Shown: positions 16,782-31,434 of the stretch, piece after piece
Position numbering within the stretch: position 1 is the first letter of the stretch
How the letters are laid out: every line of letters starts with the position of its first letter
NCBI GenBank assembly: GCA_002269645.1
Contig: NIVC01000272.1
Coordinates: forward strand, 1-64,000
Direction of reading: 5' to 3'
Source of the DNA: Macrostomum lignano
Lineage: Eukaryota
DNA length: 64,000 nucleotides
Translations under genes and position numbers: made by a program
Notes under the pieces: model-generated
Told to the model about the DNA's origin: nothing
Database searches by the model: none
What the model saw: only the letters and a program-made list of their open reading frames with translations

Positions 16782-17207
16782 CTACCAGCCGTCAATGCAG
16801 CCCACATTGCCAGCCTGCACGTCGTTCCTGGCGTTCTTCTGCAGCACTTTGCCCTCCTCGTCAACCACCACCAGGCAGGGGATGCCGCTGACGCCGTACT
16901 GCTCGGAGAGGCCCTTGCGCTCCTCGGCGTCAAAGGGCACCACATAGTAGTCTCCGTGCGACTCGTTCATGTAGCTCCACATGGAGGCCTCGTCGCGGTC
17001 GCACGACACGAACACGCACTCCACGGCCTTGTTGGCAGCCTTGGCCTCGGCGTAGAACTTGGCCAGCACCGGGGTGAAGCTGCGGCAAGGCGGGCACCAG
17101 TGCGCGGAGAAGTACAGCATGATCTTCTTGCCCGGTAGCAGATCTTTGCCGGAGAATTCCTTCTTCTCCTTGTTCAGCAGCGTCAGGTCGATGGGCTTGA
17201 TCGGCAT
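16782..17207 (-). CDS. Single-domain nucleoredoxin/tryparedoxin-like thioredoxin (141 aa), coding region intronless
   Basis: ATG at 17207. Motifs LYFSAHWCPPCRSFTPVL, VFVSCDRD and YGVSGIPCLVVVD. Confidence 0.93.
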   Translation of the reverse strand: MPIKPIDLTLLNKEKKEFSGKDLLPGKKIMLYFSAHWCPPCRSFTPVLAKFYAEAKAANKAVECVFVSCDRDEASMWSYMNESHGDYYVVPFDAEERKGLSEQYGVSGIPCLVVVDEEGKVLQKNARNDVQAGNVGCIDGW

Positions 17208-17734
17208 CCTGTTTGAGCGGATTTCCAGGCTTTTCAGGGAGGCAGGTGAGGAGCAGGAGAGATTCCAAGGCGGCTGTGTCCAGTCCCGACAGTTCAACAA
17301 TATATTATGCCAGACAAGCGAGGGAAGAGTTGCCATTGGTAACAAACTGCCGAGAGGGGTATGCAGGCTGTACGCCAAATGTACATTTGGACTGATGGGG
17401 GAGAGGGGAGGGACAGAGAATGCAGAGTACGTACTGCAGTTTTCACGCACTCTGGTGTCGAGTGGCCTGCGCGCACTGGTCGGTCCAGTAGGGGGGGTAG
17501 AATGAGCTGCAGTCTCATGGGAAGAGAATTTTTTCTCCCAAGAGAGAATCAAATCGATTTCCAAAGCACATCGCAATGCACTGCAATACATGTATTTTAA
17601 CAAATGGAAAATTCCACAAAGCGACGTGGCTAGATCGTGTCGCCATCATGAGTCACTGAACTGGGATTTTTTTATTGCATGCGTTTGTGCAAAATATTAC
17701 ATGCACTTTTAATCAACTTCGGCCCGACCACAGA

Positions 17735-18445
17735 CTACAGAAATGAATTTATTCCCCACATAGGCCTGGCCATAAACTACGGAAACGAATTTATTCCCCA
17801 CATGGACCCGGCCATAGACTACAGAAACGAATTTATTCCCCACATAGTCCCGGCCATAGACTACAGAAACGAATTTATTCCCCACATAGTCCCGGCCATA
17901 GACTACAGAAACGAATTTATTCCCCACATAGTCCCGGCCATAGACTACAGAAACGAATTTATTCCCCACATAGGCCCGGCCATGGACTACAGAAACGAAT
18001 TTATTCCCCACATAGGCCCGGCCATAGACTACAGAAACGAATTTATTCCCCACATAGTCCCGGCCATAGACTACAGAAACGAATTTATTCCCCACATAGT
18101 CCCGGCCATAGACTACAGAAACGAATTTATTCCCCACATAGGCCCGGCCATAGACTACAGAAACGAATTTATTCCCCACATAGTCCCGGCCATAGACTAC
18201 AGAAACGAATTTATTCCCCACATAGTCCCGGCCATAGACTACAGAAACGAATTTATTCCCCACATAGGCCCGGCCATAGACTACAGAAACGAATTTATTC
18301 CCCACATAGGCCCGGCCATAGACTACAGAAACGAATTTATTCCCCACATAGTCCCGGCCATAGACTACAGAAACGAATTTATTCCCCACATAGGCCCGGC
18401 CATAGACTACAGAAATGAATTTATTCCCCACATAGACCTGTGCAT
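17735..18445. repeat. 42-bp minisatellite (cccggccatagactacagaaacgaatttattccccacatagt)
   Basis: About 17 near-identical copies; 14-aa period in the ORF track. Confidence 0.96.
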
Positions 18446-18947
18446 AGATTACAGAAAACAAATGTAATCTTTCTTTGGAATTGAATTCAATCGAAGTTCT
18501 TGTACGGTTTAATTTAGAATTCAAATTTGTTTAAAATTCAGGGCGAAATGGTTTATTGCATAACTAATGTGCCAGTATATATTAGCATTGTTCAAGCGAC
18601 CTTTGTGCCTGATGAGCAGCAAAGACTAGTCTGCATAAGGCATCATCTTCAATATCTCTCGTAGAATCAATCTGGTTGGCTCGGAAGCAGCAACCGCACC
18701 GGAATGTTAACACATCGGGGACCTCCCTGAGACCCGGCGAGTTCAATGATCCCCGATCATTGCCAAATAAATAACAAGGGCACTCGCCAGCCAAGACCGA
18801 TTTAGGATTGAGAAATCCAGTCAAAACTAGCAATACAAATTGATTTAAAATTGCCAGTTCGGTAGCGCAGCTCGGTGTCAATATATTTAGGCTAGCAGAA
18901 ATGCTCAGGCTCGAGTAACGGTCGATCATCAAGAGGCAATTCGCACT

Positions 18948-21900
18948 TCACCTGCCCCTGCCACCGCCGCCTTTCCGCTTGCCGCCCTTCCGGTTCGTCA
19001 GCTTGTTCCGCTCGCGAGTTATGCGCGCCTTCACAATCTGCTCCACGCTTTTGCGCTCCGACTGCTGCTGCCCACCTTTCTTTCCTGGGCGGCCGCCTGG
19101 CGCCGCCGCTGCTGCTGCCGCCGCGGCCGCTGTAGGACCGTGCCGCTTACGCTGCAGACCCAGGACGCGCATGCCGCCACGGCCACCGCCGCCTCCCCGA
19201 CCTTCTCCGTCGCTGCCGGCGCCGTCATCGTCAGCGCCGTCCTCGCCGCCGCCTCCTAGCGCCTCCGCATCGCCGCCGCCGATATCGGGGTTCCGCTTGC
19301 GCCACTTGGCGTAGCGGTCGGTCTTGTAGGAGGCCGGCACCAGCTGGCCGCTCTCCGTCCGCACCATCAGCCGCTTGGCCGCCGACGGGCCGCCGCCGGC
19401 CGCCGAATCTGCCGACACGAACTTCTTCCGCTTTCGGTCCCAGATCCGACCGCCGGCGCCCGGCGCCCGTCCGCCGCGGCGCATCTGGTCGGTCTCATCA
19501 GCCAGGATGTCCATACTGTGCCGCTGCAGGTCCTGCGCCAAGCCGCGCTCCGTCGCCGCCGTGGCCTCGTCGCGGGTGTACGGCATGAAGAAGCCGCCGG
19601 CGCCGCTGGCTTTGATGTCGCCGCTGTCGGCGCCGTCTGCGTTGGATCCGGTTGCGACCGCCGCCGCCTCCCGTTTGCCTCCGCCACGCAGTGCGGCATC
19701 AAGCCAGCCGGCCGGCCGCTTCTGAGTCTTGGCCTGCAGATACAAAAATGCGATCAATACTACTCAAAACAGAAAGTAAGTAGTGTAGAAAAGATTGGAA
19801 ATACTGATAAACACCGCGGCCCTCACCTTTTCAATGACTCGACGATTCTTTTGTCGGAATTTTTGCATCACCTCGGCAACAGCGGCCGGTGCGTTCTTCG
19901 TCTCGAACACCGTGGCCCGGGCTCGGTAAGCTCTGCGGGGCGGGCTCTGCTTGGTTAATAGTGCCGGACACTCACTCTGACACTGACGGACACTCACCCA
20001 GACACTGGCCGGACACTCGCCATGACACTGACGGACACTAACCCAGACACTGGCCGGACACTCACCCAGACACTGGCCGGACACTCACCCAGACACTGGC
20101 CGGAAACTCACCCAGACACTGGCCGGACACTAACCCAGACACTGGCCGGACACTAACCCAGACACTGGCCGGACACTCACCCAGACACTGGCCGGAAACT
20201 CACCCAGACACTGGCCGGACACTCACCCCGACACCGTTCTGAAAGCCCGCAGCTCACCTGATCTGCTTAAGCACATCATCCTTGGCGCTGGTTAGCTCCG
20301 CAAACATCGGGTGCGGCTGCAGGTCGAGCTGGCCGGTCCGTCGGGCCTCCTTGCACTTGGCCACCGCCTGCCGGCTGGCGCCCGGCCTTGACCGGACATA
20401 GTGCTCCATGGCGCGCTTGGCGCAATCCAGCTGGGCGCGCAAATCGGCGCTGATGTCGTGTCGATGCCGGCACCAATCAGCGAATTCTTCCACGGCGGCG
20501 GCGGGCACGCAGCCGACCAGGTCGCCGGGTTCGTCCGGCTGAATCGGCGGTTCGCCCGGCGCCGCGCGGAGGTAGCGAAGGCGCCTGGCGCCGAGGAACA
20601 ACTCAAGGTCGAACAGGTAGGCCAGCTCGTCTGGCGCCAGCAGCGACACGGCGCGGCCTGGCCGGCCGGCTCGAGCAACCCGGCCAACCCGGTGGACGAA
20701 GAGCTTCTCCCTGGGCGGGAAGTGAAAATTCACGACGTTGTTGAGGCGCGGCAGGTCGAGGCCGCGGGCGGCCAGGTCGGTGGTGACAAGGACGTGCCGC
20801 TCGCCGCACCGGAAGTTGGCAGCGTGAATCCGTCGGGCCGCCGGGTCCAGGGAGGAGTACAGGTAGGTCACCGAGATGCTGGCGTCCTGGGATAGCACCT
20901 GGGGGGTGCGGGGTGTTGAGCTGGTGCTTGAGCACTTTTATCATAGGCAAATGTGAGACGAAATTGATCAATAAAAAGCCTGAGAGATCATTGCTAATTG
21001 CCAGCACATTAAAAATCCCAGATCGCGAACCTGATACAGCCACTCCACGTGGTGCTTAGTGGCCACGAACACAATGGTGAGCTCCTGGCCCTTCAGCGCC
21101 GTGTGCAGCAGGTGCAGCAGCACCGGCAGTTTGTCTTCGTCGCGGCACAGAAGGAAGCTGGCGGTCAGCTGGTCGGACAGCTTGGCGTCCAGGTCCAGAC
21201 GGACCAGCAGGGGGTCGGACAGGCCGGCCCTGGCGAACTCGGCCACCGACTGCGGCAGGGTGGCGCTGAACAGCAGCGTCTGGCGCTGGGTTGGCAGCCG
21301 GCTGAGCAGCAGCTGCAGCTGCTCCTGGAAGCCCAGCTCGAATAGGCGGTCGCATTCGTCCAGCACCAGGATCTCCACCTTGCTCAGCCTGCGGTCGGGC
21401 GGGGGCGGGATTTGAGTTGGGACTTGCAGTGGGATTCCTACCTTAGGGATTGGGATTCTTTCCTTAGGGATTGGGATTCTTACCTTAGGGATTGGGATTC
21501 TTTCCTTAGGGATTGGGATTCTTACTTTAGGGATTGGGATTCTTACCTTAAGGATTGGGATTCTTACCTTAGGGATTGGGATTCTCACCATAAGAATTGG
21601 GATTCTTACCATAGGGATTGGGATTCTTACAATAGGGATTGGGATTCTTACCTTAGGGATTGGGATTCTTACCTTAGGGATAGGGATTCTCACCATAAGA
21701 ATTGGGATTCTTACCATAGGGATTAGGATTCTACAATAGGGATTAGGATTCTTAACTTAGGGATTAGGATTCTACAATAGGGATTGGGATTCTCCCCTTA
21801 GAGATTGGGATTCTTACCTTAGGGATTGGGATTCTTACCAGAGGAGTTGGGATTCCTAAATTACTTTAGACATAAACAAAACCTGAGCAGGTCTCACTTG

Positions 21901-22415
21901 GCGTCCATCTCAGTGAGCAGGTGCAGCAGCCGGCCCGGACAGGCCACAACAATGTCCGGGTTGCTGTGCAGGGCGCTGAACTGCCGCTCCATGCTGTCGC
22001 CGCCCAGCACCAGAGCCACAGTGAGGTCAGTGAAGCGGCCCAGGGCCCGGCAGAAGTCTAGAGTCTGCAGCGCGAGCTCCCGGGTCGGGCTGAGCACCAG
22101 AGCTCGGGCGCCGTTGCACTGGTGAGCCCGCAGGCGCTCTAGCAGCGGCACCAGGAAGGCGGCGGTCTTGCCAGAGCCGGTGCGCGCCATGGCGACGACA
22201 TCCCTGCCGGCCAGGATGTGCGGCATGGTCTTGCGCTGGATCGGGGTGGGCACCCGGTAGCCTTTGCGCACGATGCCCTTGTACACTGGCGCCGACAGGC
22301 CCAGCGACTGGAAGCCACCGGACTTCCGCTGCTTCCGGTTCCGGCTGGCGATGGCCGAGCGGGACTCCGCCCGCTCCGCCGACAAGGCGGCGTCCTCAAC
22401 GACTGCCGGGGTCGA
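18948..22415 (-). CDS. DDX54: ATP-dependent RNA helicase DDX54/Dbp10 (~802 codons, no in-frame start codon found)
   Basis: Exons 22415-21898, 21388-21031, 20898-20258, 19932-19827 and 19733-18948 join in frame. Motifs: [48 protein letters not shown], and the DBP10CT-type [22 protein letters not shown]. Confidence 0.95.
19965..20230. repeat. 23-bp minisatellite (ggacactcacccagacactggcc) in a DDX54 intron
   Basis: About 11 copies; sense strand contains GGTGAGT. Confidence 0.93.
21430..21855. repeat. 21-bp minisatellite (agggattgggattcttacctt) in a DDX54 intron
   Basis: Tandem periodicity; sense strand contains AAGGTAAGA. Confidence 0.93.
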
Positions 22416-22449
22416 CTGCGGGCGGCGGTAAAGTGCATCGATAATCCAG

Positions 22450-23060
22450 CAGGGAGTTGGGGTAATCCGGTAGTGGGTTGGAGTAATCAAGTGGGTGGGT
22501 TGGGGTAATCCGGTAGGGGTTGGGGTAATCCGGTAGGGGGTTGGGGTAATCCGCAAGGGGGTTGGGGTAATCCGCAAGGGGGTTAGGGGTAATCTAGTGG
22601 GTGGGTTGGGGTAATCCGGTAGAGGGTTGGGGTAATCCGGTAGAGGGTTGGGGTAATCCGGTAGGGGGTTGGGGTAATCCGGTAGGGTTTTGGGGTATTC
22701 CGGAAGGGGGTTGGGGTAATCCGGTAGGGTTTTGGGGTAATCCGGTAGGGTTTTGGGGTAATCCGGAAGGGGGTTGGGGTAATCCGGTAGGGTTTTGGGG
22801 TAATCCGGTAGGGTTTTGGGGTAATCCGGTAGGGGGTTGGGGTAATCCGGTAGGGGGTTGGGGTAATCCGGTAGGGGGTTGGGGTAATCCGGTAGGGGGT
22901 TGGGGTAATCCGGTAGGGGGTTGGGGTAATCCGGTAGGGGGTTGGGGCAATCCGGTAGGGGGTTGGGGTAATCCGGTAGGGGGTTGGGGTAATCCGGCAG
23001 GGGGTTGGGGTAATCCGGTAGGGGGTTGGGGTAATCCGGCAGGGGGTTGGGGTAATCCGG
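22450..23060. repeat. 21-bp G-rich minisatellite (ggggttggggtaatccggtag) between NBN and DDX54
   Basis: About 28 copies. Confidence 0.95.
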
Positions 23061-23228
23061 AAGAGATTGAGAATTGGGGCACTAGGAACAATCCTTATGG
23101 CAAGCAAGACCATCAGTGGTTAATGAAACCACTAAAGGATTAAGACAGCAATAAAAAGTCCAATTAAAGCAGCAAACAGCTGACTAAACAGCAACGGTAA
23201 CTCTTGAATAAGACCTAAGATTCACGGG

Positions 23229-23234
23229 TTTATT
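23229..23234 (-). terminator. Candidate polyadenylation signal (AATAAA) of NBN
   Basis: AATAAA on the minus strand about 180 nt after the NBN stop codon. Confidence 0.5.
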
Positions 23235-23413
23235 GAATTACTCGCAAAGCATACATTAGTACAAAAATAGACCAAGTAAAAATGCAGCTGCGCTTATAAA
23301 TTGAAGCGAAAAACAGACGAGCAAAAATGTAAATTGCAAAAGAAACAAAAATGCAGGGGGGCTGACAGACCCCCTTAAAAATAATATAAATACAGATAGA
23401 GAGCGGCAGGTGG

Positions 23414-25341
23414 TCACGTGAACAGATCGTCAAACAGACGGTCAGCCTGGGAGGCGCTGTCGCCAGCATTAGAGGCCTGCCCCTGAAATCCGACACGACC
23501 TCCCCGACCGGTGGACTTCGCCTTCCGCCGCGACTCGCCGATTCCGTCATTGGCGTCGTCCTCGGCCTCCAGCAAGTCGAAGACGCTGCCGTGGCCGCCG
23601 CCGTCGCTGCCACTGCCGGCAATCTTTCTGGTGTCATCGGTGCTGACGGAGCCGCCGCTGATGCCGCCGCCGCTGTCGCGGGCAACAAGCCGAGTGATGA
23701 GCGGCGATCTGGCGGCCGACGAGCCCGACGCCTGCTGGCTGACCGACCGAGCAGCAGCCGACTTGGCAACGAAGCGCTTGAAGTTCGGAACCACCCGGCC
23801 GCGCCACACGGCCTGGTTGGGCCCAGCGGGGGAGGCGGCGGGCTGCGGCGTTAGCGGCTTCGGCTTGGCGGAGATCAGCGACCGCTTGTTGACGCGCATG
23901 TAGCGCGGCTCCTCGGCGGCCAGGGGGAAATCGCTGAGGGTCAGCTCGGCGGCAGGTGGCTTGCGCAGCGACTGCTTGTCTGGCGGCGCTGGACCGATGT
24001 TTGTCTTCACCTCGGATAGTGGCGCCAGCAGTGGCGCCGGCTTTGGCGCCGGCTGCTCCGGCGAGTCGGCGGCTGTTTTGCTGAAGTACTGCAGCATGCT
24101 GGCCTGCCGCTTGGCCTGCGGAGCAGCGGCGTCCGACGGTTCGCCTTTGCGCCGCCGGCTGCCGGCCAGGCCGACCGACTCGTTGGCTGGCTTCTTCACC
24201 GGTGACGGCGACTGGCTGCACAGGCGCTTCGGTGCCGGCCTCGGGGCCGCCGGTTCCACAGCGGGGCTGCTGCCATCGTCCGCGAATAGCGACAGAATGC
24301 CGCGGCCAGCGACTCCGCTTTCGGTTCCGCTTCCGGCTTCGTTTTTGACTTCCCCTTTGTCGCAGCCGTCGGCCGCACTGGCCGATGCCGACGGAGCTTC
24401 GGACAGTCGTGGCCGGCGCCTGTCCGGCTGGACGCATTCGGCGTCGACCTCGCTAGCAATAGCTATGGAAGAACGCTTGCGCGGTTGCTGCTGTGGCTGC
24501 TGCTGCTGCTCGGAGGCCTGGGTGGAGGTGTCCAGCAGGCTGGGGTCGCAGGGGGCGCACGGGTTGCAGACCAGGTCGGTGCGGCAGGCCAGCACGGCCC
24601 AGCAGATCTCCAGCTCTAGCACTGGCCGGCGGCTCGCAGACCTCAGGAGGCTGAAGACCCGCCCGGTCCAGTCCGAGTCCGCGGGGCCCGCCGAGGCCGA
24701 CCGGACAACCAGGACGGTGTCATCCGCCAAATCGGCCAGCTGCAGGCCGACGGCGAGCAGCGCTGACTCCGAGTGGGCGGCCAAGGCGACTCCTCCGGCC
24801 GCCTGGACGATGTCGCCGAACCGGCCGAGGCCGTCCGGACGAAGGAAACAGCAGCGCCGGCCGGACAGCAGGCGGCGTCGCTCTGGCTGGGGTCCAAAGT
24901 CGACGCTGTCGGCCAGCGGGCCGGACAGCAGGGCGGCCTCGGACACGGCCGGCCGAAATCGCTCGGGAAGTGGGGGCGGTTGGCCGGCCTGGACAGCCGC
25001 GGCCAGGCGGGTGAGAAAATCGGGCAGCACGGGAGCGGCCAGGTGCAGCAGGCCGAGCACCAGCTTGGCCGTCACGGTCAGCCGCGGCATCACCAGCAGG
25101 TCGGCGCCGTCTCTGGCGTCGTCCACCACCCGGCCGCCGAGCCGCTGCAGCGTCGTGGTGGCCGTCTGCCGGCTGGCCTCGCTTAGCGCTGAGAAGCAGA
25201 CTCGGAGGCCTTGGCGCCTGAGGCGGCAGACCGCGCCCAGGCTAGGGTCCGAGTCCCCGAATTCCAGCTGATCGCCCGGCCTGGCGGGAAAGTGGCGAAT
25301 GCGGCGAAATCAATGACAGACAGACAGACAGACAGACAGTC

Positions 25342-25382
<41 letters not shown>

Positions 25383-25387
25383 CCCGA

Positions 25388-25472
<85 letters not shown>

Positions 25473-25490
25473 AAGACAGACAGACAGACC

Positions 25491-25530
<40 letters not shown>

Positions 25531-25535
25531 CCCGA

Positions 25536-25602
<67 letters not shown>

Positions 25603-26819
25603 GCCGGACAGACAGCAGCTGTAACAGACAGACAGCCAGACAGACAGACAGACAGCCGGACAGACAGCAGCTGTGACAGACAGACATCCAGACAGACAGA
25701 CAGACAGACAGCCGGACAGACAGCAGCTGTGACAGACAGACAGACAGACAGCCAGACAGGCAGGCAGACAGCCGGACAGACAGACAGCCGGACAGACAGC
25801 AGCTGAGACAGACAGACAGCAGCTGAGACAGACAGACAGCCAGACAGGCAGGCAGACAGCAGCTGAGACAGACAGACAGCCAGACAGCCAGACAGACGGA
25901 CAGACAGCCAGACAGCCGGACAGACAGCAGCTGTAACAGACAGACAGCCAGACAGACAGACAGACAGCCGGACAGACAGCAGCTGTGACAGACAGACAGA
26001 CAGACAGCCAGACAGGCAGGCAGACAGCCGGACAGACAAACAGCCGGACAGACAGACAGCCGGACAGACAGCAGCTGAGACAGACAGACAGCCAGACAGC
26101 CAGACAGACGGACAGACAGCCAGACAGACAGACAGACAGACAGACAGACAGCCGGACAGACAGCAGCTGAGACAGACAGACAGCAGCTGAGACAGACAGA
26201 CAGCCAGACAGGCAGGCAGACAGCAGCTGAGACAGACAGACAGCCAGACAGCCAGACAGACGGACAGACAGCCAGACAGCCGGACAGACAGCAGCTGTAA
26301 CAGACAGACAGCCAGACAGACAGACAGACAGCCAGACAGACAGCAGCTGTAACAGACAGACAGACAGCCAGACAGGCAGGCAGACAGCCGGACAGACAGA
26401 CAGCCGGACAGACAGACAGCCGGACAGACAGCAGCTGAGACAGACAGACAGCCAGACAGCCAGACAGACGGACAGACAGCCAGACAGACAGACAGGCAGA
26501 CAGCCGGACAAACAGCAGCTGAGACAGACCCATAAAACAGTTCACAGACTTACCGAACGGTGACCCCGGCGGGCCCGGCAGGCGCGGCATCGCAGCCGTT
26601 GACGCGGGTGCCGTACCGGGAGGCCAGGTCAGCCAGTATGAGCAAGCCCGGCTCCGGGCCCGGCCGGAGCTCGGCGTGCACCCGGCTGACGGACTTGCAG
26701 TCCAGGTGCAGCTGCACTTTGCTCTTCAGGCGGCCGATATGGGCCCGGCTACCCGGCTGGTCCATGGGCGGCAGGTAGAGGCACCGGTCCGACTCCTGCA
26801 GTTCCAGGTACCACAGCAT
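23414..26819 (-). CDS. NBN: Nibrin (Nbs1): FHA, BRCT, Mre11-binding and ATM-binding motifs; one 1-nt frameshift as assembled
   Basis: Exon 26819-26554 (FHA: SVSRVHAEL, DLASRYGTRVNG). Exon 25280-23414 (PGDQLEFG, then a frameshift in a G-run near 25256, then LRVCFSAL..LQRLGGRVV..LLVMPRLTVTAKLVLGL, PNFKRFVAK and C-terminal ADRLFDDLF). Confidence 0.85.
25315..26528. repeat. Compound (GACA)n microsatellite with gcagct/gccg variants filling the NBN intron
   Basis: Direct observation. Confidence 0.96.
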
Positions 26820-26974
26820 GGCCGGTGGAATGCTGAAGAGTGTGGCAGGTTGCTTCAAGTTAGTGCGGAGGACTACCATTGGCTAAACCGATGGGCACAG
26901 CATCCGGGGATTAAAAGATGAAGGACGGGTGGCCGAATCAGATTGAAATATGCAGATTTTAGAGAAAGGGATTA

Positions 26975-27475
<501 letters not shown>

Positions 27476-27884
27476 CATCAATCTATCCAATAAAAGAACC
27501 AAAGCTTCGCACGCACATTTCTTATCAATTAAAAATCGCTGAACAGCTGTCAGTTTATTAGCATAAAATTTGGCGTAAAATGCGACACCCAATTAATACA
27601 AACGGATTAGCAGAGACAAAGCACAAAGACACACGAGTTGCCCATAGAAATTTGATTTTAAAATTGTATACAAACTTGTCATTCGATTTGTAAATGTGAA
27701 TTTAATACGAAAAATGCGATTAGTTAAGAAATATTAATTGTTAATTGCAAATATTTTATGTAGGATACGGATGATATACTAGTAAAATGATTCCGGTAAT
27801 GCTCGCATGCCATACTCAATACTGTGAGTAGAAAGCCAGGATTTTTTTAGTCTGGCTGAAAAGAGGATTTTGGAATTGAGATAT

Positions 27885-28100
27885 CGGGATCTCATAGTCA
27901 AACTGGGATCCCATGATCAGACTGAGATCTCATGATCAGACTGGGATCTCATGGTCAGACTGGGATATCATGGTCAGACTGGGTCTGGGATCTCATGGTC
28001 AGACTGGGATCTCATGATCAGACTGGGATCTCATGGTCAGACTGGGATCTCATGGTCAGACTAGGATCTCATGATCATACTGGGATCTCATGGTACCTGG
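27885..28100. repeat. 19-bp minisatellite (gactgggatctcatggtca)
   Basis: About 10 copies. Confidence 0.9.
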
Positions 28101-28168
28101 ATTTACAGGAGTTGGGATCTGGGATCATCCCACAGTCTATTTACTGTTAACCTTGTCAGCGGAAATCG

Positions 28169-29694
28169 CTACACCTGGGTGGTGAGCAGCCGCAGCAGGT
28201 GCTCCTCAATAGCCAGCTGGGCCTGCCGGGCCCCCTTCCTGGTGCACAGGGCGTAGGCGTTGAGCCGGTCGGCATTCTCAGCGTAGAGATCCGCGCCCCA
28301 GCGCAGCAGCTTAGCCACGCAGTCGGAGTGGTTGTTGTAGGCGGAGTACATCAGGGCGGTGTTGTACAGCTCGTCGCTCTGATTCACATCGGCGCCAGCT
28401 CGCAGCAGGTGCTCAACAATGTCCGCATGGCCGTAGCAGGCAGCCAGCAGCAGGCCGCTCTCGCCATTGTCGGCTGTGAGGTTCAATGAGGCGCCTTTGT
28501 ACAGCAGCAGCTCCACGGTTGGCGTCTGGCCGTTGGCACAGGCCCAGAGCAGCGGGCTGAAGCCTTTTTGGTCCTGCTGGTCCAGGTCCAGGCCGGGCCG
28601 GTTCATGCGCTCCTGCGATAATCACAATATTTGAAGGGATTGTGAAGGGATAATTGGAGGGATTGTGAAGGGATAGCTGGGGATTGTAAAGGGATAACTG
28701 GTGGATTGGGAAGAGATAATTGAAGGGATTGCGAAGGGATAACTGGTGGATTGCGAAGGGATAATTAAAAGGATTGTGGAGGGATTGTGAAGGGATAATT
28801 GAAGGGATTGTGAAGGGATTGTGAAGGGATAATTGAAGGGATTGTGAAGGGATAATTGAAGGTATTGTGAAGGGATAATTGAAGGGATTGTGAAGGGATA
28901 ATTGAAGGGATTTTGAAGGGATAATTGAAGGGATTGTGAAGGGATATTTGAAGGTATTGTGAAGGGATAATTGAAGGTATTGTGAAGGGATAATTGAAGG
29001 GATTGTGAAGGGATAATTGAAGGGATTGTGAAGGGATAATTGAAGGGATTTTGAAGGGATAATTGAAGGTATTGTGAAGGTATGAGGGAACAGACTGAGA
29101 ATGAAACAATTGAGCAGGTTGTGGAGAGAATAGTGGATCATTGTGGAGAAAAATGGAAGGGAAAGATGGCGACAGGCCGCCAAAAAGGTTAAAATTAGAC
29201 TCCTCAAAGGCAGGCAGACTCACCTGCAGCAGGTTGAGCTCGCCCTGGGCAGCCAGCTGGTGAAGCGTGAGCTCCCTGACTTCAAACTGGGCGGTGGTCT
29301 GGATATTCCGGCGCTGCACGTTGGTCAGCACTGTGCTGATCTTGTTTGGCGACCGGCCCTTCTGCGGCGGCTGCTGCTGCTGCTGCGCCTGGGAAACTGG
29401 CTGATGAGGCAGTGGCGGAGTCTGCTGCGTCTGCAGCTGCTGCTGATGGTGCGGCGGTTGCATCATGCCGAAGTGAAACACGGGCCCCATTGATGCAGCA
29501 GGGGAGCTGTGAGCTGCCTTTGTGCCACCGCCACCACCGCCCATGAGCTGCTGCTGTTGAAGGCGGTGGGCAGCCGCTGCAGCCGCCATCTGATGCTGCT
29601 GCTGCTGCTGGTAGGCAGCCGAGATCGAGTGGTGCTGCGAGTGCGGCTGCTGCAACAGCACGGGATCAGGCATAGGGCTGCGGCTCTTCCTCAT
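28169..29694 (-). CDS. ANKRA2: ANKRA2/RFXANK-family ankyrin-repeat protein (~304 aa)
   Basis: Exons 29694 (or 29673)-29224 and 28612-28169. Motifs STVLTNVQRRN, LTLHQLAAQGE, GFSPLLWACANGQ and IEEHLLRLL; Gln-rich N-terminus. Confidence 0.88.
28630..29080. repeat. 23-bp minisatellite (gaagggattgtgaagggataatt) in the ANKRA2 intron
   Basis: Tandem periodicity. Confidence 0.93.
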
Positions 29695-29699
29695 TACTC

Positions 29700-30185
29700 G
29701 CTCAAGAGTTCCGATCCCAACTTCATATCCTCACTCGAGAGTCCCGATCCCAACCCCAGATCCTCACTCAAGAGTCCCGATCCCAACTTCATATCCTCAC
29801 TCGAGAGTCCCGATCCCAACTTCATATCCTCACTCAAGAGTCCCGATCCCAATCCCAGATCCTCACTCAAGAGTCCCGATCCCAACCCCAGATCCTCACT
29901 CGAGAGTCCTGATCCCAACCCCAGATCCTCACTCGAGAGTCCCGATCCCAACCCCAGATCCTCACTCAAGAGTCCCGATCCCAATCCCAGATCCTCACTC
30001 GAGAGTCCCGATCCCAACCCCAGATCCTCACTCGAGAGTCCCGATCCCAACCCCAGATCCTCACTCAAGAGTCCCGATCCCAACCCCAGATCCTCACTCG
30101 AGAGTCCTGATCCCAACCCCAGATCCTCACTCAAGAGTCCCGATCCCAATCCCAGATCCTCACTCAAGAGTCCCAATCCCAACCT
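29700..30185. repeat. 33-bp minisatellite (aagagtcccgatcccaaccccagatcctcactc)
   Basis: About 15 copies; 11-aa period in the ORF track. Confidence 0.95.
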
Positions 30186-30614
30186 CGGATCAATAGTATA
30201 ACCTGAATCTCGACCTTAAATTCTTACTTAAGTCAGGATCCAATCAAATTGCACTAGCAACACAATAATAATTTTAATCCAGTTATTAATCAACAGAAAT
30301 CAGGTAAATAAAGCACAGAACCGATTACGCGCACAAAACAGAAACCGAATGACAGGATCAGAAACTTATTGTCACCCGCGCCAAATACCGAACAGCAGGG
30401 CTTGGCGGGGTGAGGAATTTCGATAAACAGAAGAAGCCACCAAACACTGAAAGCGATAAATAAATTTCTAAACAGAGCAGACAGTTGACAGCCAATTAGC
30501 TGCAAAAAAACAACTCTAAAACAACAAATACGAAATGAAAAAGTAAGACAGGTAGATGGGATTCGAGCGATTAATTATGAGAGGCAAAAGTAGGACCATC
30601 AAAAAACAAGAAGG

Positions 30615-30970
30615 GAAGTCAGTGAAGGGATGATTGCAGGGTCAGTGAAGGGATGATTGAAGGGTCAGTGAAGTGATGATTGAAGGGTCAGTGAAGTGAT
30701 GATTGCAGGGTCAGTGAAGGGATGATTGAATGGTCAGTGAAGTGATGATTGCAGGGTCAGTGAAGGGATGATTGCAGGGTCAGTGAAGGGATGATTGAAG
30801 GGTCAGTGAAGTGATGATTGAAGGGTCAGTGAAGTGATGATTGAAGGGTCAGTGAAGTGATGATTGCAGGGTCAGTGAAGTGATGATTGAAGGGTCAGTG
30901 AAGTGATGATTGCAGGGTCAGTGAAGGGATGATTGAAGGGTCAGTGAAGTGATGATTGAAGGTCAGTGAA
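30615..30970. repeat. 23-bp minisatellite (agggtcagtgaagtgatgattga)
   Basis: About 15 copies. Confidence 0.93.
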
Positions 30971-31107
30971 TGCACCGATGGGGTCAGTGCAGGGAGAGAA
31001 ACAGCTGACTGTAACACACTGGAGAAAGGCTATTACAGATTGCACTATTGTGCCGCATTGAAATTTGCTCCAAGCAAAGTTCTCCCCGGAGGCATCAGGC
31101 CAGGCTT

Positions 31108-31434
31108 TCACTTGTCCTTCTTGTTCTGCTTCCGGCCCTGCTGCTTGCTGCCGGTTTCAGCCTCGCCAGTGGCCGCAGCGGGCCGCACCGGCTGCCAGTG
31201 CAGCTGACTACGCCGGTACATGGGCCAGGGCGGCAGGGTGAGCAGGGCGGACAGGGCAAAGCCGGCGGCTAGGATGAGCACAGTCTGCGAGAACTGCTGG
31301 CAGATGTAGCCCCAGGCTAACCCAGCCACGCCAAATATTGCCAGTACAAACTGGAAGGTGCGCTCGGCCCTGCGCTGGCCCTCGAAGTCCATGTGGGTGG
31401 GGATGCGGCTGGTCAGGTCAGTGAGAAACTTCAT
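31108..31434 (-). CDS. SPCS1: Signal peptidase complex subunit 1 (SPC12), 108 aa, coding region intronless
   Basis: MDFEGQRRAE, GYICQQFSQTV and LPPWPMYRR are SPC12 motifs. Confidence 0.95.
   Translation of the reverse strand: MKFLTDLTSRIPTHMDFEGQRRAERTFQFVLAIFGVAGLAWGYICQQFSQTVLILAAGFALSALLTLPPWPMYRRSQLHWQPVRPAAATGEAETGSKQQGRKQNKKDK

What the first reader, a model, noticed from the sequence alone, without database searches (positions are those of the whole stretch)
22390..23234. DDX54 has no clear in-frame ATG and would be completed by a spliced-leader AUG
Seen: the first recognisable exon starts after a typical acceptor (gccgcccgcag, exon from 22415) in phase 0 with TCG ACC CCG. The next in-frame ATG lies after the Q motif. 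Upstream are only a minisatellite, ~170 nt without a convincing coding exon, and the NBN poly(A) signal. Established: flatworm spliced leaders end in AUG, which can initiate translation. Inference: trans-splicing yields M-STPAVVED, so this essential helicase would depend on the SL for its start codon as a downstream operon cistron.
Basis: partly seen in the sequence, partly recalled or inferred. Interest (0 to 1): 0.72.

Follow-up and report, generated by a model that had tools for sequence, protein, structure and literature searches.

The report
Spliced leader supplies DDX54 start codon
In the flatworm Macrostomum lignano the gene for the ribosome-assembly helicase DDX54 has no start codon of its own, and almost certainly gets its AUG from the trans-spliced leader RNA; this mechanism was already shown in other flatworms, so the case is real but ordinary.

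Summary
The window is the first 64 kb of M. lignano scaffold NIVC01000272.1. DDX54 lies on the minus strand in five exons, 22415 to 18948. Exon 1 starts right after ...ccgcccgcag|TCG. The reading frame has no in-frame ATG upstream, and the first in-frame Met (residue 64) lies after the Q motif.

Two other genomic copies carry the same ATG-less 5' end. All three copies are under purifying selection (synonymous:non-synonymous 22:3, 10:0, 18:3).

The GenBank proteins for all three copies are flagged "partial". They begin at the acceptor, or 3 nt inside it in one copy. That annotation pipeline trims the SL from reads and cuts transcripts at the SL-read peaks.

Joining the published 35-nt SL (...TTGCATG) gives M-STPAVVED... 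. This puts 33 residues before the conserved GGFQ, against 29-32 in other flatworm orthologues.

The rival starts fail. The ATG at 22438 is out of frame in every copy. The minisatellite changes frame between copies. No upstream cis exon is annotated.

Operon membership with NBN meets the published distance criterion but is not demonstrated. No SL-bearing read was seen here.

An SL AUG acting as initiator is established in flatworms (Cheng et al. 2006). This is a new member of a known kind, of low to moderate interest.

The parts
23414..25129 (-). Last large exon of the upstream gene NBN/nibrin (FHA + NIBRIN_BRCT_II; GenBank PAA86581.1, BOX15_Mlig017032g4). Stop codon TGA at 23416-23414.
23229..23234 (-). 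NBN poly(A) signal AATAAA, 180 nt after the NBN stop. It is the only AATAAA in the spacer and is present in all three genomic copies.
23061..23228 (-). Unique spacer of 168 nt between the poly(A) signal and the minisatellite. It contains ATG|gtcttg at 23113-23111, a weak donor. No Rfam family matches here.
22442..23060 (.). 21-nt minisatellite (transcribed strand CCGGATTACCCCAACCCCCTA, 29.4 copies). This is outron sequence. Its length is 599, 263 and 451 nt in the three copies (mod 3 = 2, 2, 1), so it is not coding.
22436..22438 (-). Out-of-frame ATG 23 nt upstream of the exon, inside the outron. It is removed by trans-splicing and has the same offset in all copies.
22416..22433 (-). Inferred SL trans-splice acceptor ctttaccgccgcccgcag: a C-rich pyrimidine tract plus CAG. 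It is the first AG in at least the 125 nt scanned upstream of it, and it resembles this gene's own cis acceptors (..cgaccgcag, ..gccccgcag).
   Evidence: The GenBank CDS starts at 22415.
21898..22415 (-). DDX54 exon 1, starting TCG ACC CCG (S-T-P). It holds the Q motif at 22236-22262 and the first in-frame genomic ATG at 22224-22226 (Met64).
21031..21388 (-). DDX54 exon 2.
   Evidence: The model is 100% identical to PAA86580.1.
20258..20898 (-). DDX54 exon 3.
19827..19932 (-). DDX54 exon 4.
18948..19733 (-). DDX54 exon 5 (DBP10CT region), including the stop codon at 18950-18948.

Best explanation
The mature DDX54 mRNA of Macrostomum lignano is made by trans-splicing the 35-nt spliced leader (...CAATTTATTGCATG) onto the CAG acceptor at 22418-22416. 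The last three bases of the SL become codon 1. Translation then runs [16 protein letters not shown]... through five exons to the stop at 18948, giving an 803-aa DDX54/DBP10 helicase.

The sequence upstream of the acceptor is an outron that is discarded. It comprises 168 nt of unique spacer, a length-variable 21-nt minisatellite, and an out-of-frame ATG. The genomic gene therefore has no start codon of its own.

Most likely the outron is the intercistronic part of a polycistronic precursor that also carries the upstream NBN gene. NBN belongs to a same-strand cluster SPC12-Ank-NBN-DDX54-redoxin.

Shown here: the ATG-less gene structure in three copies; purifying selection on those copies; the frame match with the SL; the match of the N-terminus to orthologues; and the 5'-partial public CDS starting at the acceptor.

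Inferred: that SL reads sit at this site; that the SL AUG is the codon used; and that NBN and DDX54 share one precursor.
For: (1) Gene structure. There is no in-frame ATG between the upstream in-frame stop and Met64, which lies after the Q motif. This holds in the window and in two other genomic copies.

(2) Public annotation. GenBank proteins PAA86580.1, PAA68056.1 and PAA85936.1 are all 'partial' and begin STPAV, STPAV and TPAV. The gene range in the window copy is exactly 22415-18948.

(3) How that annotation was made. SL-containing reads were trimmed and mapped, transcripts were cut at the SL peaks, and ORFs were called with TransDecoder (PMC5730564). The neighbouring NBN gene behaves the same way: its L003 copy is a 5'-partial CDS (IPPAMLWY...) starting 1 nt after a cttcag| acceptor.

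(4) The SL. It ends in ATG (PMC8629364; PMC10468722). The joined sequence translates in frame as MSTPAVVED....

(5) N-terminus. With the SL Met there are 33 residues before GGFQ. Flatworm orthologues have 29-32, and their own Met aligns within about 1-3 residues of the SL Met.

(6) Selection. The three copies differ by synonymous:non-synonymous changes of 22:3, 10:0 and 18:3, with no frame-breaking indel, so they are functional genes.

(7) Acceptor. It is the first AG in the 125 nt scanned upstream (22540-22418) and resembles the gene's cis acceptors.

(8) Precedent. The SL AUG is in frame in 28% of S. mansoni trans-spliced transcripts and more than 40 cDNAs need it (Cheng et al. 2006, as quoted in PMC9851317). 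The same holds in E. granulosus (PMC3510090).

(9) Operon context. The genes are on the same strand. The NBN stop-to-acceptor distance is 998, 661 and 850 nt in the three copies. In the window 619 nt of this is tandem repeat, leaving 379 nt after adjustment, under the published 1-kb operon threshold (PMC8629364). The upstream Ank gene shares the transcriptional-unit prefix Mlig017032 with NBN and is tagged TRANSSPLICED.
Against: No SL-bearing read, cDNA or browser track could be inspected, so the evidence for the junction is indirect.

The acceptor CCGCAG lacks the T at -5 of the enriched motif [T/C]TNCAG. That motif is present at only 9,551 of 21,754 sites, so its absence is weak evidence.

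The third copy's CDS starts 3 nt inside the exon.

5'-partial CDSs also arise without trans-splicing: the redoxin gene downstream is 5'-partial at a site with no AG.

NBN and DDX54 carry different transcriptional-unit prefixes (Mlig017032 and Mlig020098), so the public RNA-seq assembly did not join them. The authors note that units break in repeat-rich spacers.

DDX54 was not found in the stored, truncated part of the table that carries TRANSSPLICED tags.
Confidence: 0.85

Rival explanations
1. DDX54 is SL trans-spliced and uses the SL AUG, but it is not an operon cistron. It would have its own promoter in or upstream of the spacer, and the outron would be the 5' part of a monocistronic primary transcript.
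For: [quoted passage not shown] NBN and DDX54 have different transcriptional-unit prefixes in the public annotation. The raw NBN stop-to-acceptor distance of about 1 kb is long compared with the 100-nt mode.
Against: The repeat-adjusted distance is 379 nt from the NBN stop and about 170 nt from the poly(A) signal, under the published 1-kb criterion. Five same-strand genes sit in a row with repeats in every spacer. Ank and NBN share a unit prefix. Transcriptional units are reported to break in repeat-rich spacers.
Confidence: 0.3
2. A tiny cis-spliced first exon ends in ATG|gt at 23113-23111 and is spliced to the acceptor at 22415. This would give the same M-STPAV protein without the SL.
For: ATG|GT is present at 23113 and is conserved in all three copies. 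One of this gene's own donors (GTTCGC) is also non-consensus.
Against: GTCTTG departs from the M. lignano donor motif GT[G/A]AG at positions +3 to +5. With such an exon, the RNA-seq-based annotation would have called a complete ORF starting with M, but all three copies are 5'-partial and start at the acceptor. The site lies only about 100 nt past the NBN poly(A) signal.
Confidence: 0.05
3. An assembly indel hides the true start. Under this reading the ATG at 22438 is really in frame, and the ATG-less gene is a sequencing artefact.
For: Mlig_3_7 is a long-read assembly, and the ATG is only 23 nt upstream of the exon in GC-rich sequence.
Against: The offset is the same 23 nt in three distinct genomic copies. 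Those copies differ from each other by 3-6 substitutions in exon 1, with no gaps. Models from the independent ML2 assembly read the same frame (...[14 protein letters not shown]). The one substitution upstream of GGFQ (codon 26, AAC to AAT) is synonymous in the DDX54 frame. The DDX54 frame, not the ATG frame, aligns with orthologue N-termini.
Confidence: 0.02
4. Translation starts elsewhere on a non-trans-spliced mRNA: at Met64, at a non-AUG codon, or in the minisatellite as a repeat-containing N-terminal extension or an NBN-DDX54 fusion, as in UniProt A0A1I8IU19.
For: In the window copy the DDX54 frame happens to stay open for 222 codons through the repeat. One automated model fuses NBN and DDX54 through it.
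Against: Met64 lies after the Q motif, so starting there would delete it. By established DEAD-box knowledge the Q motif is needed for ATP binding. In the other copies the open frame upstream is only 38 and 45 codons. The repeat length varies by amounts that are not multiples of 3, and the ATG-23113 ORF is in a different frame and terminates. NBN has its own stop codon and poly(A) signal.
Confidence: 0.04

Closest known systems
SL-AUG-initiated mRNAs of Schistosoma mansoni and S. japonicum (Cheng, Cohen, Ndegwa & Davis 2006, J Biol Chem 281:733)
   Same: The flatworm SL ends in AUG. The acceptor sits directly before codon 2 of a conserved protein. No other in-frame AUG preserves the conserved N-terminus. 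The SL Met corresponds to the orthologues' initiator Met.
   Different: The species belongs to a different, early-branching lineage (Macrostomorpha) with a different SL sequence. Here the SL junction is inferred from annotation rather than from cDNA, and translation from the SL AUG has not been tested.
SL-AUG use in Echinococcus granulosus ESTs (PMC3510090)
   Same: The argument is the same: the SL AUG is required if the N-terminus is to match conserved orthologues. Use of the SL AUG is reported there as conserved within Neodermata.
   Different: In those cases the SL was seen on cDNAs. DDX54 is not among the examples I could find. Parasitic-flatworm DDX54 gene models begin with a Met, presumably encoded in the genome, since they are genome-derived predictions.
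M. lignano operons as defined by Ustyantsev & Berezikov 2021 (PMC8629364)
   Same: Adjacent same-strand genes, a downstream gene that is (inferred) SL trans-spliced, a repeat-adjusted spacer under 1 kb, and a spacer inflated by tandem repeats.
   Different: No polycistronic precursor has been shown for NBN-DDX54, and the two genes were placed in different transcriptional units.
slORFs, i.e. ORFs created by SL addition (slORFfinder, PMC9851317)
   Same: The SL supplies the start codon of an ORF.
   Different: That work mostly concerns novel or alternative ORFs and near-cognate codons in nematodes, trypanosomes and Oikopleura. Here the ORF is the canonical, conserved protein.

Membership tests
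Flatworm mRNAs that take their initiator Met from the SL 3'-terminal AUG | The organism's spliced leader ends in AUG. | tested here: met
   The published M. lignano SL is CGGTCTCTTACTGCGAAGACTCAATTTATTGCATG (PMC8629364). The window is M. lignano scaffold NIVC01000272.1.
Flatworm mRNAs that take their initiator Met from the SL 3'-terminal AUG | The mature mRNA 5' end lies at a 3' splice acceptor with no upstream cis exon. | tested here: met
   The RNA-seq-derived GenBank CDSs are 5'-partial. They start at the base after the CAG in two copies and at +3 in the third. The pipeline cuts transcripts at SL-read peaks.
Flatworm mRNAs that take their initiator Met from the SL 3'-terminal AUG | SL sequence is physically joined to that acceptor in reads or cDNA. 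| not testable with these tools
   No M. lignano transcript reads or contigs are reachable. The protein database holds no M-STPAV fragment.
Flatworm mRNAs that take their initiator Met from the SL 3'-terminal AUG | The SL AUG is in frame with the main ORF, with no intervening stop. | tested here: met
   The SL plus exon 1 translates as [16 protein letters not shown]... in all three copies.
Flatworm mRNAs that take their initiator Met from the SL 3'-terminal AUG | No alternative in-frame AUG preserves the conserved N-terminus, and the SL Met matches the orthologues' Met. | tested here: met
   The first genomic in-frame Met is residue 64, after the Q motif. There are 33 residues before GGFQ against 29-32 in flatworm orthologues.
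Flatworm mRNAs that take their initiator Met from the SL 3'-terminal AUG | Translation actually initiates at the SL AUG. | not testable with these tools
   This needs a reporter, ribosome profiling or a comparable experiment.
M. lignano operon (criterion of Ustyantsev & Berezikov 2021) | Adjacent genes in the same orientation with a repeat-adjusted distance under 1 kb. | tested here: met
   998 nt from the NBN stop to the acceptor, minus the 619-nt tandem array, leaves 379 nt. Both genes are on the minus strand.
M. lignano operon (criterion of Ustyantsev & Berezikov 2021) | The downstream gene is SL trans-spliced. | tested here: inconclusive
   Only indirect evidence: the 5'-partial CDS starts at the acceptor. 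No TRANSSPLICED tag for Mlig020098 was found in the truncated stored table.
M. lignano operon (criterion of Ustyantsev & Berezikov 2021) | A single precursor RNA spans both genes. | tested here: inconclusive
   The unit prefixes differ (Mlig017032 for NBN, Mlig020098 for DDX54). Units are known to break at repeats. Ank and NBN do share a prefix.
DDX54/DBP10 DEAD-box RNA helicase | DEAD, Helicase_C and DBP10CT domains, and orthology to DDX54. | tested here: met
   Pfam PF00270, PF00271 and PF08147 hit the product. The best non-Macrostomum hits are annotated DDX54, at 40-58% identity.

The most novel reading that the evidence does not exclude
The loss of the genomic ATG may be an evolved replacement. 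The acceptor CAG sits exactly where orthologues have their ATG, within about 1-3 residues in the alignment. In the Macrostomum lineage the start codon of an essential ribosome-biogenesis helicase would then have been converted into a trans-splice acceptor. Production of the protein would depend on trans-splicing, and this state has been kept under purifying selection in all three post-duplication copies.

If the many 'partial' M. lignano GenBank proteins hide a whole class of such genes, obligate SL-AUG initiation would predate the Neodermata. Its extent in a free-living model flatworm has not been catalogued: the 2021 SL survey does not address AUG use.
Probability: 0.3. Interest if true: 0.4.

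Novelty: new member of a known kind. Interest (0 to 1): 0.25.

Why it matters
The main value is for curation. The three GenBank DDX54 entries are labelled 'partial', yet they are probably complete except for an SL-encoded Met. Two UniProt models of this gene (an NBN-DDX54 fusion and a frameshifted model) are wrong.

The case is also a clean example of a conserved, probably essential gene under purifying selection whose translation depends on trans-splicing. M. lignano has working transgenesis, so an ATG-less reporter placed behind this outron could test SL-AUG initiation in vivo. No new mechanism is revealed.

Tried and rejected
- A 173-aa N-terminal protein query found no Macrostomum sequence; the best hit was 63% identical. 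All listed hits were under about 300 aa, which suggests the search favours hits of similar length. The full-length query then found the M. lignano entries.
- Searching the window for the SL sequence down to 12-mers found nothing, so there is no SL RNA gene here.
- An Rfam scan of 22300-23500 gave no hit.
- Literature searches for Mlig020098, and for Macrostomum together with DDX54, found no papers.
- The supplements of PMC8629364, PMC5730564 and PMC12582326 contain neither this gene nor DDX54.
- The supplement of PMC5816591 is stored truncated. It holds only the neighbouring Ank gene, Mlig017032.g3.
- Cheng et al. 2006 and Wasik et al. 2015 are not held, so they are cited only through papers that quote them.
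- I checked whether the '.gN' suffix marks position in an operon. For DDX54 the suffixes g1-g3 are the three genomic copies, so the name says nothing about cistron order.
- I rejected the minisatellite as coding sequence. Its length differs between copies by amounts that are not multiples of 3, and in-frame stops lie 38 and 45 codons upstream in the other copies.
- I did not use the metagenome or prokaryote-genome DNA scans, because they cannot contain flatworm transcripts.

Full report
**Observation**

On the minus strand the sequence reads ...ggattatcgATGcactttaccgccgcccgcag|TCG ACC CCG GCA GTC GTT GAG GAC..., with the exon starting at 22415. Stop to stop, the helicase reading frame is open from 23081 to 21897. 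It contains no methionine until RKTM64PHIL (ATG at 22226-22224), which follows the Q motif GYRVPTPIQ at 22262-22236.

The ATG at 22438 is 23 nt upstream of the exon, so it is out of frame. It heads a 99-codon ORF in another frame. The ATG at 23113 heads an ORF that runs through the repeat in a different frame and stops at 22583.

Upstream lie three features:
- a 21-nt minisatellite at 22442-23060, with 29.4 copies;
- 168 nt of unique sequence with no Rfam match;
- the single AATAAA at 23234-23229, 180 nt after the NBN stop codon.

**Identity**

I built a five-exon model from GT-AG junctions that keep the frame: 22415-21898, 21388-21031, 20898-20258, 19932-19827 and 19733-18948. It gives 802 codons plus a stop.

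The model is 100% identical over its full length to GenBank PAA86580.1, 'hypothetical protein BOX15_Mlig020098g2, partial [Macrostomum lignano]'. That protein carries the Pfam domains DEAD, Helicase_C and DBP10CT. The encoding contig is NIVC01000272.1 of assembly GCA_002269645.1 (Mlig_3_7). Window coordinates equal record coordinates, and the annotated gene range is exactly 22415-18948. The public CDS therefore starts at the base after the CAG and has no start codon.

**Three copies**

M. lignano carries recent duplications. Two further copies exist: PAA68056.1 on NIVC01001427.1 (locus L002) and PAA85936.1 on NIVC01000301.1 (locus L003). Both are also flagged 'partial'.

All three loci share the sequence atcgatgcactttaccgccgcccgcag|tcgaccccggcag. 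In each, the ATG sits 23 nt upstream of the exon and out of frame, and there is no in-frame ATG before an in-frame stop. That stop lies 222, 38 and 45 codons upstream respectively.

The repeat block measures 599, 263 and 451 nt (mod 3 = 2, 2, 1). The ORF from the 23113-type ATG falls in different frames relative to DDX54 in different copies. The repeat is therefore not coding, and the long open frame through it in the window copy is an accident of repeat composition.

These are truly different sequences. Exon 1 differs by 3-6 substitutions between copies, with no gaps. An assembly indel that hides an in-frame ATG is therefore very unlikely. UniProt models from the independent ML2 assembly also read ...[14 protein letters not shown] in the same frame.

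Across the whole CDS the copies differ by synonymous:non-synonymous codon changes of 22:3, 10:0 and 18:3, plus one 3-nt indel in an alanine run. All three ATG-less genes are under purifying selection, so they are not pseudogenes.

**Why the 5' end is a trans-splice site**

The Mlig_3_7 annotation was built in four steps (PMC5730564):
1. extract reads that contain the trans-spliced leader;
2. trim the leader and map the reads;
3. cut transcriptional units at the resulting peaks (the TBONE pipeline);
4. call ORFs with TransDecoder.

A 5'-partial ORF runs to the transcript's 5' end. If the transcript had continued upstream, in copies L002 and L003 it would have met an in-frame stop within 45 codons. 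The caller would then have fallen back on Met64. If there had been an upstream cis exon with an ATG, the CDS would be complete. Instead the CDS starts at the acceptor in two copies and 3 nt inside it in the third.

The neighbouring NBN gene shows the same signature. Its L003 copy is a 'partial' 715-aa protein beginning IPPAMLWY, which starts 1 nt after a cttcag| acceptor.

A 5'-partial CDS alone does not prove trans-splicing. The downstream redoxin gene is 5'-partial at a position with no AG. The informative point is the coincidence with an acceptor.

The CAG at 22418-22416 is the first AG in the 125 nt I scanned upstream of it. The next AG, 13 nt downstream, would put the SL AUG out of frame. 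The C-rich tract resembles this gene's own cis acceptors, such as cgaccgcag and gccccgcag. It lacks the T at -5 of the enriched trans-acceptor motif [T/C]TNCAG, but that motif occurs at only 9,551 of 21,754 sites.

**The start codon**

The published M. lignano SL is CGGTCTCTTACTGCGAAGACTCAATTTATTGCATG (PMC8629364). A later Macrostomum genome paper explicitly calls the terminal ATG a translation start codon (PMC10468722).

Joining the SL to 22415 gives AUG UCG ACC..., which translates as [30 protein letters not shown]... in all three copies.

Among 112 Met-initiated DDX54 homologues retrieved, the number of residues before the conserved GGFQ ranges from 24 to 181, with a median of 66. The flatworm orthologues (Heterobilharzia, Clonorchis, Taenia, Anoplocephala, Rodentolepis) have 29-32. 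M. lignano with the SL Met has 33. In the alignment the orthologues' own Met falls within about 1-3 residues of the SL Met. Nothing but the Met is missing from the N-terminus.

**Operon context**

SPC12, Ank, NBN, DDX54 and a redoxin gene all lie on the minus strand within about 15 kb. Every spacer between them holds tandem arrays.

The distance from the NBN stop to the acceptor is 998 nt in the window, and 661 and 850 nt in the other copies. In the window 619 nt of this is minisatellite. That leaves 379 nt, or about 170 nt measured from the poly(A) signal.

Ustyantsev & Berezikov define operons by a repeat-adjusted distance under 1 kb with a trans-spliced downstream gene. They also note that RNA-seq transcriptional units break in repeat-rich spacers.

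A published table lists an ANKRA2-like gene, Mlig017032.g3, as TRANSSPLICED. It shares its unit prefix with NBN (Mlig017032.g1 and g4). I infer that it is the Ank gene of this cluster, which would suggest that Ank and NBN were cut from one unit. DDX54 has a different prefix (Mlig020098). A shared precursor for NBN and DDX54 is therefore plausible, at roughly 0.6-0.7, but not shown.

**What is already known**

The mechanism is established.
- All reported parasitic-flatworm SLs end in AUG (PMC12582326).
- Cheng et al. 2006 (J Biol Chem 281:733) reported the SL AUG in frame in 28% of S. mansoni trans-spliced transcripts, with more than 40 cDNAs needing it as the initiator. I cite this as quoted in PMC9851317.
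- E. granulosus ESTs gave the same conclusion and showed conservation within Neodermata (PMC3510090).

No paper I could search mentions this gene. The dedicated M. lignano SL survey does not analyse AUG use.

**Rival explanations**

- An ATG|gt micro-exon at 23113 would give the same protein. Its donor GTCTTG is poor, and the RNA-based annotation shows no such exon.
- An assembly frameshift is contradicted by the three copies and the independent assembly.
- Initiation at Met64 would delete the Q motif.
- A repeat-encoded N-terminal extension or an NBN fusion (UniProt A0A1I8IU19) is contradicted by the frame and length variation of the repeat and by NBN's own stop codon and poly(A) signal.
- The live alternative concerns only the operon claim: DDX54 could be trans-spliced from its own promoter.

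**Verdict**

It is a new member of a known kind. Its main value is for curation, and as a convenient test case in a flatworm that can be made transgenic. Interest is 0.25.

Noticed in passing
window 26817-26835 (minus strand); L001 1584-1599: NBN has an acceptor ...ctcttcag|C 13 nt before its own ATG (26819), and the L003 copy is annotated 5'-partial from that site. If the SL is added there, its AUG is out of frame. It would open a 28-codon upstream ORF that overlaps the NBN start (68 codons in the L003 copy).
   Followed up: partly
window 28606-28615 (minus strand): The Ank (ANKRA2-like) gene has ...gattatcgcag|GAGCGC ATG. If this CAG is its trans-splice site, the SL AUG would be in frame two codons upstream of the genomic ATG (M-E-R-M...). 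A gene I take to be this one (Mlig017032.g3) is tagged TRANSSPLICED and neoblast-enriched in the supplement of PMC5816591.
   Followed up: partly
window 16782-31434 (minus strand): Five same-strand genes (SPC12, Ank, NBN, DDX54, redoxin) have CDS-to-CDS gaps of 2501, 1349, 998 and 1626 nt. Each gap contains one or more tandem arrays. This looks like a repeat-inflated operon or gene cluster.
   Followed up: partly
window 22442-23060: The template (plus) strand of the minisatellite is 49% G, with GGGGGTTGGGG blocks and many G-quadruplex-like patterns. The transcribed outron RNA is correspondingly C-rich. Copy number differs about two-fold between the three genomic copies.
   Followed up: no
window 21430-21855, 19963-20234, 17723-18457, 25315-26530, 26973-27487: There are further minisatellites and microsatellites: in DDX54 introns 1 and 3, downstream of DDX54 (42-nt unit, 17.5 copies), in an NBN intron (GACA-rich, 1.2 kb), and upstream of NBN ((TATC)n). 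Intron lengths differ between the three copies because of these arrays.
   Followed up: no
UniProt A0A1I8IU19 (P0123) and A0A1I8FG00 (P0122): Two automated ML2-based models of this gene are wrong. One fuses NBN to DDX54 by reading through the minisatellite. The other contains frameshifted stretches. A0A1I8HKH6 starts QSTPAV, so it includes the acceptor CAG as a codon.
   Followed up: partly
window 16782-17321 (minus strand): The GenBank CDS of the redoxin/nucleoredoxin-like gene is 5'-partial, beginning SLVWHN... at a site with no AG. It starts 39 nt later in the L003 copy. The likely true start is the in-frame MPIKPIDL at about 17207.
   Followed up: no
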